A stretch of 64,000 nt of DNA, taken from assembly GCF_006345805.1 (NCBI RefSeq), contig NC_043012.1, forward strand, positions 52,018,001-52,082,000, given 5' to 3'. The number at the start of each line of letters is the position of its first letter. Positions within the stretch are counted from its first letter, which is position 1. The notes below the pieces were generated by a model, which saw nothing but the letters and a program-made list of their open reading frames with translations, was not told the DNA's origin and searched no databases. Below, in pieces: positions 21,131 through 22,732 of the stretch. The translations under genes and the position numbers were made by a program. This DNA comes from Octopus sinensis (lineage: Eukaryota).

Positions 21131-21516
21131 CGATTATGCGTGTAATACCTCATCACGAAGCCACACGCTTCTACAGACATATACGCCTCTATTCCCACAC
21201 ACACAACACACTCACACACACAAACACACATTCATACAACAAATATTTACATATATGTATATATATATATATATATATATATATATATATATATATAATT
21301 AATCAATATAGGGTGGCAAAAAATTTCGTAGAATTTATTTGCCACCAGCGGCCTAGTGGGAAAAAATTAAATAGTCATAGACCATTTATAAGTTCAACAT
21401 CACAATCAAGGAATGGCCATAATAGGCCATTCACCCACTAGAAATAACAGCCAAAGCTTCAACCGCAAAATAACATTAATTCCGCAAACCAGGAGAAAAT
21501 TAAAAAAACATTTACC

Positions 21517-21629
21517 CTGTAATTTCTTATACGATGCACCGTTTCATCTATTGTTTAATGGTAAACTAACCTGATTAAATTAAATCAAGCCAATCTTCCA
21601 TAGGCCGATAGATTCGTCAGTAAGAACAG
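21517..21629 (-). ncRNA. Type I hammerhead ribozyme, copy 1 (inverted)
   Basis: Exact reverse complement of 21815-21927; tcgtcag (CUGACGA) at 21614-21620. Confidence 0.85.
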
Positions 21630-21814
21630 CCAGATCCGAGCAGATATTATCACGAGGCACCTCTATCCCTGCCTCGGCAATATCTGACCTAAAATTTTCA
21701 AATCATCGCACTCGCGCCAAATTTATCGGCAGAAAATATAAGCCGCCGATTCCATTACGGAATTAACCACAAAATTCATAGAGGTGCCTCGTGATAATAT
21801 CTGCTCGGATCTGG

Positions 21815-21927
21815 CTGTTCTTACTGACGAATCTATCGGCCTATGGAAGATTGGCTTGATTTAATTTAATCAGGTTAGTTTACCATTAAACAATAGATGA
21901 AACGGTGCATCGTATAAGAAATTACAG
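21815..21927 (+). ncRNA. Type I hammerhead ribozyme, copy 2; predicted cleavage after GUA at 21914
   Basis: Stem I UUCUUA (21818-23)/UAAGAA (21915-20), extended by CUG/CAG. Core CUGACGA 21824-30. Stem II AUCUAU (21831-36)/AUAGAU (21893-98). GAAA 21899-902. Stem III ACGG-UGCA-UCGU. H17 = A. Confidence 0.88.
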
Positions 21928-22297
21928 GGTAAATGTTTTTTTAATTTTCTCCTGGTTTGCGGAATTAGTGTTATTTTGCGGTTGAAGCTTTGGCTGTTAT
22001 TTCTAGTGGGTGAATGGCCTATTATGGCCATTCCTTGATTGTGATGTTGAACTTATAAATGGTCTATGACTATTTAATTTTTTCCCACTAGGCCGCTGGT
22101 GGCAAATAAATTCTACGAAATTTTTTGCCACCCTATATTGATTAATTATGAATTTTCTGGTTAATTCCGTAATGGAATCGGCGGCTTATATTTGCTGCCG
22201 ATAAATTTGGCGCGAGTGCGATGATTTGAAAATTTTAGGTCAGATATTGCCGAGGCAGGGATAGAGGTGCCTCGTGATAATATCTGCTCGGATCTGG

Positions 22298-22410
22298 CTG
22301 TTCTTACTGACGAATCTATCGGCCTATGGAAGATTGGCTTGATTTAATTTAATCAGGTTAGTTTACCATTAAACAATAGATGAAACGGTGCATCGTATAA
22401 GAAATTACAG
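22298..22410 (+). ncRNA. Type I hammerhead ribozyme, copy 3; predicted cleavage after 22397
   Basis: Identical to copy 2, offset 483; CTGACGA 22307-22313, GAAA 22382-22385. Confidence 0.88.
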
Positions 22411-22732
22411 GGTAAATGTTTTTTTAATTTTCTCCTGGTTTGCGGAATTAATGTTATTTTGCGGTTGGAGCTTTGGCTGTTATTTCTAGTGGGTGAATGG
22501 CCTATTATGGCCATTCCTTGATTGTGATATATATATATATATATATATTATATATATATATAATATATATATATATATATATATATATATATACATATAC
22601 ATATATATATATTATATATATATATATATATATATATATATATATATATATATACATACATTTATTGATATATTTATGTATGCATATTGCATGTTGTATA
22701 ATTTTATATATGCATTCATATAAATATATGAA

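What the first reader, a model, noticed from the sequence alone, without database searches (positions are those of the whole stretch)
21295..22528. Young 483-nt hammerhead-ribozyme repeat: candidate retrozyme / circular-RNA retroelement
Seen in the sequence: a non-coding 483-bp unit in three near-identical copies (about 4 substitutions, none inside the ribozyme), each with a complete type I hammerhead fold. Two are in direct tandem, so self-cleavage at 21914 and 22397 would release an exact 483-nt monomer (21915-22397). Established: tandem type I hammerhead repeats in animals (non-LTR retrozymes, newt satellite 2, Schistosoma Sm-alpha, Penelope pLTRs) give self-cleaved monomers and circular RNAs and are thought to be mobilised by Penelope-type RTs. 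Inference: this is a recently active family of that kind, with a larger monomer than the typical animal examples I recall. I do not know of a description of it in cephalopods, but cannot check that here.
Basis: partly seen in the sequence, partly recalled or inferred. Interest (0 to 1): 0.92.

Follow-up and report, generated by a model that had tools for sequence, protein, structure and literature searches.

The report
Hammerhead-ribozyme retrozyme inserted in TA microsatellite
A 1.2-kb block made of a non-coding 483-base unit carrying a self-cutting hammerhead RNA motif sits inside a TA microsatellite, laid out as one flipped copy plus 1.55 tandem copies; this looks like a single young insertion of a known kind of small parasitic retroelement (an animal "retrozyme") and not a new kind of system.

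Summary
Positions 21295-22528 consist of one 483-bp unit present as a full inverted copy (21295-21780) and a direct run of 1.55 units (21778-22528). The copies differ at 4 positions, none inside the ribozyme. Each copy has a complete type I hammerhead: core CUGACGA...GAAA...GUA|U, 6-bp helices I and II, and a short palindromic helix III. A descriptor scan found this motif only in these three places, and in 0 of 300 simulated windows.

No Rfam hammerhead model detects it, even at E<=10. Helix II carries a 56-nt extension, and pair 10.1-11.1 is A-U rather than G-C.

The three copies are best read as one composite insertion, not three family members:
- The block splits a (TA)n microsatellite.
- All three junctions show 2-3 nt of microhomology.
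- All copies read through the cleavage site.
- The inverted copy cannot have been copied in one pass from the neighbouring run.

This is the tandem/inverted, microsatellite-biased signature of Penelope-like element (PLE) integration. The template was a circular or multimeric RNA.

No other copy, autonomous partner, transcript or host identity could be obtained with these tools. Verdict: a new member of a known kind (non-LTR retrozyme) with an unusual ribozyme variant. Interest is moderate.

The parts
21243..21297 (.). Left half of the split (TA)n microsatellite (target site)
   Evidence: TRF period 2, 27.5 copies. The sequence reads ...TATATATA|ATTAATCAAT.
21295..21780 (-). Inverted copy: one complete, circularly permuted unit (483 nt plus 3 nt overlap). 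Its reverse complement starts at the equivalent of 22147 and ends at the equivalent of 22149.
   Evidence: Inverted pairs I1 and I2, BLAST, register table.
21516..21634 (-). Hammerhead copy on the minus strand (core CUGACGA at 21620-21614; predicted cleavage between 21530 and 21529)
   Evidence: Descriptor scan. Identical to the plus-strand copies.
21778..21780 (.). Inner junction between the inverted and direct parts: 3-nt microhomology ATA shared by both
   Evidence: Overlap of repeat coordinates; sequence.
21778..22528 (+). Direct run of 751 nt, equal to 1.55 units of period 483 (full unit 21778-22260, partial unit 22261-22528)
   Evidence: Direct family D2, spacing 483, 99% identity; BLAST.
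21810..21928 (+). Hammerhead 1. Helix I is 21818-21823/21915-21920, with a 4x4 internal loop and 4 more pairs. Core CUGACGA is 21824-21830. Helix II is 21831-21836/21893-21898 plus a 56-nt extension arm. GAAA is 21899-21902. Helix III/loop is 21902-21913, the palindrome ACGGUGCAUCGU. Cleavage follows A21914.
   Evidence: Sequence, descriptor scan. The constrained fold is -30.7 against an MFE of -32.8 kcal/mol.
22293..22411 (+). Hammerhead 2, identical to hammerhead 1; cleavage follows A22397
21915..22397 (+). The 483-nt monomer that double self-cleavage would release. It is non-coding (at most 60 stop-free codons in any frame of the circle), 37.7% G+C and strongly self-paired.
   Evidence: Fold z-scores -5.3 (plus) and -6.95 (minus). 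The circular fold is 65% paired. ORF check. G+C.
22527..22681 (.). Right half of the split (TA)n microsatellite
   Evidence: TRF period 2, 79 copies. The junction reads ...GATTGTGAT|ATATAT, where the unit itself continues GTTGAAC.

Best explanation
The block 21295-22528 is a single, evolutionarily young insertion of a non-autonomous hammerhead-bearing retroelement (a metazoan non-LTR retrozyme) into a (TA)n microsatellite.

Proposed life cycle (inferred from the family; not shown here):
1. A locus with two or more units is transcribed, by Pol II or read-through. T6-T7 runs in every unit argue against Pol III.
2. The type I hammerheads cut after GUA. They probably work best as a pair, through the palindromic helix III.
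3. The 483-nt monomer, with its ends held together by helix I, is circularised by a host RtcB-type ligase.
4. The circle, or an uncleaved multimer, is copied by the reverse transcriptase of a Penelope-like element at a nicked target.

What this locus shows directly:
- Both outer ends and the inner junction carry 2-3 nt of microhomology.
- Both arms are longer than, or equal to, one unit and read through the cleavage site.
- The arms point towards each other.

My reading (inference) is that cDNA synthesis was primed from both nicked strands of the TA repeat (twin priming) on sense RNA, and the two cDNAs joined at ATA. The inverted arm being exactly one turn (483+3 nt) hints at a circular template on which the polymerase stopped at its own start.
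For: Hammerhead motif:
- The full catalytic core plus three helices occurs in all three copies and nowhere else in the 64 kb.
- In 300 composition-matched simulated windows there were 0 hits at the observed stringency (helices I, II, III of at least 6, 6 and 4 pairs) and 0.013 per window at 4, 4 and 3 pairs. Extrapolation gives about 1e-4 per window, or about 1e-6 for a 483-bp unit.
- The hammerhead fold lies within 2.1 kcal/mol of the MFE. The helix III 12-mer is self-complementary (duplex -17.5 kcal/mol), as in dimer-acting metazoan type I hammerheads (PMC4209133, PMC7229834).

Retrozyme-like unit:
- G+C is 37.7%, there is no ORF longer than 60 codons, and fold z-scores are -5.3 and -6.95.

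One insertion event from an external template:
- The block splits a TA microsatellite. Only 3.4% of the window lies in perfect TA runs, so having both ends in TA by chance is about 0.1%.
- The inverted copy runs through every position of the circle. It cannot be copied contiguously from the 751-nt direct run without an in-register jump.
- The copies are 99-100% identical, whereas other repeats in the window are 70-93% identical.

PLE signature from the literature:
- Partial tandems with an adjacent inverted copy and a (TA)n insertion bias (PMC8557442).
- A PLE protein nicks and extends both target strands in vitro (PMC11167929).
- Retrozymes are proposed to be PLE-mobilised, pLTR-derived elements (PMC7229834; bioRxiv 10.64898/2026.07.22.740005).
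Against: - No Rfam hammerhead family matches, at gathering score or at E<=10, on 64 kb, 1.4 kb or 131 nt.
- Pair 10.1-11.1 is A-U instead of the highly conserved G-C.
- Helix II has an unusual 56-nt extension.
- The three copies are identical in the ribozyme, so there is no covariation evidence.
- Only one locus is known. There is no other copy in the window, in viral or metagenome contigs, or through ORF look-ups.
- No PLE reverse transcriptase was seen in the window. The only RT fragment, 59658-59915, matches generic RVT_1.
- A target-site duplication cannot be read in a microsatellite.
- The 1.55-unit direct arm does not fit a polymerase that always stops after one turn.
- The (TA)n bias is documented for Naiad, and hypothesised for Neptune PLEs. 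Naiads lack canonical hammerheads (PMC8557442).
Confidence: 0.7

Rival explanations
1. The element is the same, but the template was an uncleaved linear multimeric transcript and not a circular RNA. The hammerhead plays no part in integration.
For: All three copies read through the cleavage site, and the direct arm is 1.55 units. For an Anolis PLE, unprocessed RNA was the dominant insertion substrate and cleavage was not needed in vitro (PMC11167929).
Against: The inverted arm is exactly one unit plus 3 nt. That has about a 1-2% chance for an arbitrary stop on a linear multimer, but is expected for a circle. Circular RNAs are abundant for studied retrozymes (PMC7229834).
Confidence: 0.3
2. The block has a DNA-level origin. 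Either an extrachromosomal circular DNA or tandem array of the unit was integrated by end joining, or it arose by serial replication template switching within the AT-rich microsatellite. No reverse transcription was involved.
For: The 2-3 nt microhomologies at all three junctions also fit microhomology-mediated joining. There is no poly(A), no readable target-site duplication and no RT nearby.
Against: The unit carries a complete hammerhead in exactly the tandem context known for RNA-mobilised elements. The inverted-plus-partial-tandem layout in (TA)n is the described PLE footprint (PMC8557442). A local duplication from the present direct run needs an in-register jump.
Confidence: 0.12
3. The hammerhead is a chance or decayed motif in an ordinary young local duplication. 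Nothing is cleaved.
For: Rfam models do not score it. Pair 10.1-11.1 is A-U. There is no covariation. At about 1e-4 per 64-kb window, a multi-gigabase genome would hold a handful of chance matches.
Against: Coincidence of such a rare motif with a 483-bp tandem/inverted repeat has a chance of about 1e-6. The extra features are not demanded by the descriptor: a palindromic helix III, an internal loop in helix I at the usual distance, and helix I closing the monomer.
Confidence: 0.08
4. The block is an accidental cDNA copy of an exogenous, viroid-like or satellite circular RNA replicon of the animal or of something living in it. It is not a resident genomic family.
For: It is a single locus with no relatives found anywhere. 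The template was unit-length, circular-type, non-coding and highly structured.
Against: A ribozyme is found in one polarity only. No hairpin, twister, HDV-like or second hammerhead is on the other strand. The searchable collections hardly contain animal genomes, so the absence of copies is weak evidence.
Confidence: 0.05

Closest known systems
Metazoan non-LTR retrozymes (coral, mussel, axolotl; newt satellite 2, Schistosoma Sm-alpha) - PMC7229834
   Same: - Type I hammerhead repeated in direct tandem.
- Non-coding, low G+C, highly self-paired monomer.
- Short palindromic helix III suited to dimeric action.
- Monomer size within the reported range (51-972 bp in bioRxiv 10.64898/2026.07.22.740005).
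   Different: - Helix II is 6 bp plus a 56-nt extension, against about 4 bp plus a small loop.
- Pair 10.1-11.1 is A-U.
- It is not detected by Rfam Hammerhead_1.
- Only 1.55 direct units plus an inverted unit are present, not a long array.
- Family size, circles and expression are unknown.
Penelope-like element insertions (pLTR partial tandems with an upstream inverted copy; microsatellite bias) - PMC8557442, PMC11167929, PMC4209133
   Same: - Partial tandem plus adjacent inverted copy.
- Insertion in (TA)n.
- Hammerhead in the repeated part.
- A larger-than-usual helix II (6-8 bp) is reported for PLE hammerheads.
- Both target strands are nicked and extended.
   Different: - No RT/GIY-YIG ORF; the whole element is the 483-nt repeat.
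- Helix III is present, whereas PLE min-hammerheads often lack it.
- There is no unpaired base between positions 9 and 10.1.
- No 30-40 bp tail is recognisable.
- (TA)n bias is documented for Naiads, which lack canonical hammerheads.
L1 twin-priming inversions (from my own knowledge; Ostertag and Kazazian 2001, not read here)
   Same: Two cDNAs primed from the two strands of one target, joined by microhomology, give an inverted 5' part next to a direct 3' part.
   Different: Here both arms are at least one unit long on a repeat or circular template, there is no poly(A), and the presumed enzyme is a PLE.
Plant LTR retrozymes and viroid-like satellite RNAs - PMC4918200
   Same: Hammerhead-delimited, non-coding, structured RNA that circularises and is copied by a borrowed polymerase.
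   Different: Those carry type III hammerheads, LTR/PBS/PPT features, more than 55% G+C and 4-bp TSDs. Viroid-like RNAs have ribozymes in both polarities. None of these is seen here.

Membership tests
Hammerhead ribozyme, type I | Conserved core C3-U4-G5-A6-N7-G8-A9 ... G12-A13-A14 ... A15.1-U16.1 and H17 at the cleavage site | tested here: met
   CUGACGA 21824-30, GAAA 21899-902, A21902-U21913, A21914. Identical in all three copies.
Hammerhead ribozyme, type I | Three helices around the core, with helices II and III closed by loops and helix I open | tested here: met
   Helices of 6, 6 and 4 pairs. The constrained fold is 2.1 kcal/mol above the MFE. There were 0 of 300 simulated windows at this stringency.
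Hammerhead ribozyme, type I | Highly conserved G10.1-C11.1 pair at the base of helix II | tested here: not met
   The pair is A21831-U21898. It is conserved in most natural hammerheads (PMC4209133) but is not part of the invariant core.
Hammerhead ribozyme, type I | Scores with the Rfam covariance models (Hammerhead_1 and relatives) | tested here: not met
   No hammerhead match at gathering score or at E<=10 on 64 kb, 1.4 kb or 131 nt. The likely cause is the 56-nt insertion in helix II plus the A-U 10.1-11.1 pair.
Hammerhead ribozyme, type I | Compensatory changes in the helices among homologues | not testable with these tools
   The three copies are identical in the ribozyme. No homologue was found elsewhere.
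Hammerhead ribozyme, type I | Site-specific self-cleavage | not testable with these tools
   Needs in vitro transcription of monomer and dimer constructs with a core-mutant control.
Metazoan non-LTR retrozyme | [quoted passage not shown] | tested here: met
   Two hammerheads lie 483 nt apart on the plus strand. The size is within the reported 51-972 bp range.
Metazoan non-LTR retrozyme | Non-coding, low G+C (below 45-50%), highly self-paired monomer | tested here: met
   37.7% G+C. At most 60 stop-free codons on the circle. Fold z-scores -5.3 and -6.95, and 65% paired.
Metazoan non-LTR retrozyme | Dispersed multi-copy family in the genome | not testable with these tools
   One locus in the 64-kb window. 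The host genome is not in any searchable collection.
Metazoan non-LTR retrozyme | Expressed as linear and circular monomer RNA | not testable with these tools
   No transcriptome access.
Metazoan non-LTR retrozyme | Coexists with autonomous Penelope-like elements | tested here: inconclusive
   No PLE was found among the ORF pieces scanned. The one RT fragment is generic RVT_1. A 64-kb window says little about the genome. The literature reports Naiad PLE remnants in cephalopods (PMC8557442), but the host is unverified.
PLE-type insertion architecture | Partial tandem with an adjacent inverted copy | tested here: met
   An inverted 486 nt followed by a direct 751 nt. This matches the description in PMC8557442.
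PLE-type insertion architecture | Insertion bias for microsatellites, (TA)n in Naiads | tested here: met
   (TA)n abuts both ends. The chance of this is about 0.1%.
PLE-type insertion architecture | 30-40 bp tail at one end | tested here: inconclusive
   It cannot be defined for a circularly permuted repeat, and nothing non-unit lies between the unit and the TA flank.
Viroid-like / HDV-like circular RNA replicon | Self-cleaving ribozymes in both polarities (symmetric rolling circle) | tested here: not met
   Only one polarity of the unit carries a motif. No other ribozyme family matches at E<=10.

The most novel reading that the evidence does not exclude
The locus is a preserved footprint of reverse transcription of a circular hammerhead RNA by a (TA)n-targeting Penelope-like enzyme. 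One arm stops after exactly one turn of the circle, both target strands served as primers, and the ribozyme is a long-helix-II, A10.1-U11.1 variant that current covariance models miss. If the host is a cephalopod, this would be the first retrozyme family described there. It would also link hammerhead retrozymes to the microsatellite-targeting PLE clades (Naiad/Neptune type), of which the Naiads are described as lacking canonical hammerheads.
Probability: 0.3. Interest if true: 0.6.

Novelty: new member of a known kind. Interest (0 to 1): 0.45.

Why it matters
Retrozymes are the only known route by which animal genomes make circular RNAs through ribozymes. How they are copied back into DNA is inferred, not shown.

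A very young insertion whose three junctions are all readable is a useful natural record of that step. It shows a template longer than one unit or circular, priming from both strands of a TA repeat, and joining by microhomology.

The locus also shows that a structurally sound hammerhead with a long helix II escapes Rfam. Surveys based on covariance models may therefore undercount such elements.

If the host is a cephalopod, the 370-480 bp perfect inverted repeat would also form long double-stranded RNA when transcribed, in animals known (from my own knowledge) for heavy A-to-I editing.

Tried and rejected
Searches that found nothing:
- Rfam at the gathering threshold on the whole window.
- Rfam at E<=10 on 21200-22600 and on 21805-21935. 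There was no hammerhead or other ribozyme family, only noise on the TA repeats.
- Other copies of the unit: BLAST against the window.
- Exact 23-25-mers of the ribozyme in viral contigs and metagenome contigs.
- The 53-aa accidental ORF of the unit as a handle on assemblies: exact look-up, word-indexed search, and a full HMMER scan of 1.84 billion representatives. The HMMER scan gave one marginal hit with no aligned stretch, which I treated as noise.
- Literature searches for retrozymes or hammerheads in cephalopods found no description.

Host identification failed:
- A mariner-like ORF found relatives of at most 57% identity.
- SINE sequence strings were not found in the paper library.
- ARAGORN found no tRNA genes.

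Readings considered and rejected:
- An endless ORF on the circle. 483 is divisible by 3, but every frame has stops.
- A snap-back (self-primed) origin of the inverted arm. That arm contains 104 nt of unit sequence lying beyond the end of the direct run, where a snap-back copy would have read into the TA flank.
- A simple mirror-image read artefact. The arms are offset by 111 nt, the copy is circularly permuted, and it differs from its partners at 2-3 sites.
- Pol III transcription of plus-strand multimers. T6-T7 runs lie at 21936-42, 22078-83 and 22121-26.

Full report
OBSERVATION

The region 21295-22528 is built from one 483-bp unit.
- A direct pair, 21778-22045 and 22261-22528, has start-to-start spacing 483 and 99% identity.
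- Two inverted pairs, 21295-21666 with 21778-22149 and 21399-21780 with 22147-22528, are 99-100% complementary.

Put in register, the block has two parts:
- An inverted copy, 21295-21780. Its reverse complement begins at the equivalent of 22147 and ends at the equivalent of 22149. That is one complete, circularly permuted unit plus 3 nt.
- A direct run, 21778-22528, of 751 nt or 1.55 units.

Only four positions differ among the copies:
- 21968: G, against A in the other two copies.
- 22468: G, against A in the other two copies.
- 22157: C, against G in the inverted copy (21770).
- 22194: G, against T in the inverted copy (21733).

None of these lies in the ribozyme, and the three 119-nt ribozyme segments are identical. 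The corrections are that one copy is inverted and that the direct part is 1.55 units rather than two full units.

THE HAMMERHEAD

On the plus strand the sequence reads as follows:
- Helix I: UUCUUA (21818-23) pairs with UAAGAA (21915-20). It is followed by a 4x4 internal loop and four more pairs.
- Core: CUGACGA (21824-30).
- Helix II: AUCUAU (21831-36) pairs with AUAGAU (21893-98). It encloses a 56-nt arm that folds into a long imperfect hairpin.
- GAAA: 21899-902.
- Helix III: ACGG/UCGU around a UGCA loop (21902-13).
- Cleavage: GUA then U, after A21914.

The second plus-strand copy cleaves after A22397. The minus-strand copy cleaves after 21530.

My descriptor scan required the core and contiguous helices of at least 4, 4 and 3 pairs. 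It found exactly these three sites in the 64 kb, on both strands.

I then ran 300 simulated windows with the same first-order composition:
- 0.34 hits per window at 3, 3 and 2 pairs.
- 0.013 hits per window at 4, 4 and 3 pairs.
- No hits at 5, 5, 3 or at the observed 6, 6, 4.

Extrapolating with a pairing probability of 0.386 per extra pair gives about 1e-4 per window, or about 1e-6 for a 483-bp unit. In a multi-gigabase genome a few chance matches are expected. A chance match sitting inside a tandem repeat is not expected.

Other supporting points:
- The hammerhead-constrained fold (-30.7 kcal/mol) is within 2.1 kcal/mol of the unconstrained minimum.
- The 12-nt helix III segment ACGGUGCAUCGU is self-complementary (duplex -17.5 kcal/mol). 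This is the feature that lets metazoan type I hammerheads with weak helix III act as dimers in tandem transcripts (PMC4209133, PMC7229834).

Points against:
- No Rfam hammerhead model reports the motif. This held at gathering score on the window and at E<=10 on 1.4 kb and on 131 nt.
- The 10.1-11.1 pair is A-U, not the usual G-C.
- Helix II is far longer than in canonical animal hammerheads.
- There is no covariation evidence, because the copies are identical.

I therefore call it a structurally complete but atypical hammerhead whose activity is unproven.

THE UNIT

The unit has these properties:
- 37.7% G+C.
- No stop-free stretch longer than 60 codons in any frame of the circle.
- Predicted folds much stronger than shuffled controls: z = -5.3 for the ribozyme-sense RNA and -6.95 for the antisense.
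- 65% of bases paired in a circular fold.
- In the linear monomer, helix I brings the two ends together.

These are the properties listed for metazoan non-LTR retrozymes (PMC7229834). The monomer size is not exceptional, since consensus lengths of 51-972 bp are reported (bioRxiv 10.64898/2026.07.22.740005).

THE LOCUS AS AN INSERTION

The block interrupts a TA microsatellite:
- (TA)27 lies at 21243-21297.
- About (TA)79 lies at 22527-22681.

Only 3.4% of the window lies in perfect TA runs, so having both ends in TA by chance is about 0.1%.

The junctions read as follows:
- Left: TA repeat, then ATA shared with the unit.
- Inner: ATA shared by the inverted and direct parts (21778-80).
- Right: ...GAT followed by ATAT, where the unit continues GTTG.

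All three hammerhead copies are intact across the cleavage site. The template was therefore uncleaved or religated.

The inverted arm runs through all 483 positions. To copy it from the neighbouring direct run, a polymerase would have had to jump in register from 22528 back to 22046. A longer tandem or a circular template from elsewhere is the simpler source.

The copies are 99-100% identical, whereas every other repeat family in the window is 70-93% identical. The insertion is therefore young. The near-identity reflects one event and not three active family members.

MECHANISM

Penelope-like elements are described as inserting in partial tandems, often with an adjacent inverted copy. They show a microsatellite bias, (TA)n for Naiads, and a bias was also hypothesised for Neptune (PMC8557442). 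A purified PLE protein nicks and extends both strands of its target (PMC11167929). Retrozymes are proposed to be mobilised by PLEs and to derive from their pLTRs (PMC7229834; bioRxiv 10.64898/2026.07.22.740005).

The simplest reading of this locus is twin-primed, target-primed reverse transcription. The steps below are inference.
1. The top-strand 3' end of the nicked TA repeat primed a cDNA that forms the inverted arm.
2. The bottom-strand 3' end primed a cDNA that forms the direct arm.
3. Both used ribozyme-sense RNA as template.
4. The two cDNA ends annealed at ATA.

The inverted arm equals one turn plus 3 nt. That has roughly a 1-2% chance for an arbitrary stop, and is what a circular template would give if the enzyme halted at its own start. 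The 1.55-unit direct arm shows that this cannot be the whole story. An uncleaved multimeric transcript remains a serious alternative (PMC11167929).

The upstream steps of the life cycle are taken from the family and were not tested here. These are transcription, paired-hammerhead cleavage and RtcB-type circularisation. T6-T7 runs in every unit argue against Pol III for multimeric sense transcripts.

WHAT COULD NOT BE DONE

- No further copy of the unit was found in the window, in viral or metagenome contigs, or through the unit's accidental 53-aa ORF.
- The searchable collections contain little animal DNA, so this absence is weak evidence.
- The host could not be identified.
- No paper in the library describes retrozymes or hammerheads in cephalopods. 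PMC8557442 notes only old Naiad remnants there.
- No PLE ORF was seen among the pieces scanned. The window holds Tc1/mariner remnants and one generic RT fragment.

VERDICT

This is a real, non-random, young composite insertion of a hammerhead-bearing non-autonomous retroelement. It meets the testable anatomical criteria of a metazoan non-LTR retrozyme and shows the PLE integration signature.

It is a new member of a known kind with an atypical ribozyme (long helix II, A-U at 10.1-11.1, invisible to Rfam). Its main value is as a readable record of how such elements integrate. Interest is moderate (0.45). Confidence in the main explanation is 0.7.

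Noticed in passing
22728-23133, 25358-25795, 34891-35290, 43383-43755, 56586-57015, 63036-63395; partial copies at 7979-8227, 9227-9623, 37220-37446: A roughly 400-bp SINE-like family with at least nine copies at 70-84% identity. One copy lies just right of the TA repeat that holds the retrozyme. 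ARAGORN calls no tRNA in any of them.
   Followed up: partly
1206-2014 and 1881-2656: Tandem segmental duplication of about 0.8 kb at 93% identity, including identical 128/154-codon open stretches.
   Followed up: no
47468-47834; related copies at 24418-24670 and 38904-39063: A 184-bp unit in two tandem copies (87% match), with dispersed relatives at 72-86% identity. Probably another short interspersed element.
   Followed up: no
18591-19634 (+) and 36449-36955 (-): Frameshifted Tc1/mariner transposase remnant (HTH_23, HTH_Tnp_Tc3_2, DDE_3), plus a second mariner-like ORF whose best database relative is only 57% identical.
   Followed up: partly
59658-59915 (+), 60863-61298 (+), 55802-56059 (-): Reverse-transcriptase fragment (RVT_1, E=2.4e-7), with related downstream pieces that have no Pfam match. 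The clade was not determined, and I did not show whether it is PLE or LINE.
   Followed up: partly
21968 and 22468: Two of the four differences among the copies are A-to-G on the ribozyme-sense strand, each private to one direct copy. This is compatible with A-to-I editing of the RNA template, polymerase error or later mutation. There are too few sites to decide.
   Followed up: no
21295-22149: The inverted and direct copies form a near-perfect 372-bp inverted repeat with a 111-nt spacer (382 bp for the outer pair). A transcript across it would fold into long double-stranded RNA.
   Followed up: no
21936-21942, 22078-22083, 22121-22126; AATAAA at 22105: T6-T7 runs in every unit on the ribozyme-sense strand. 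The first lies 22 nt after the cleavage site. There is also one AATAAA. These bear on which polymerase could make multimeric transcripts.
   Followed up: no
14647-14732 (+): A weak hammerhead-like match (helices of 3, 3 and 4 pairs), at the level expected by chance (0.34 per window).
   Followed up: yes
whole window: Very high microsatellite load: 93 TRF rows, 86 perfect (TA)>=6 runs covering 3.4% of the window, and 35.4% G+C.
   Followed up: no
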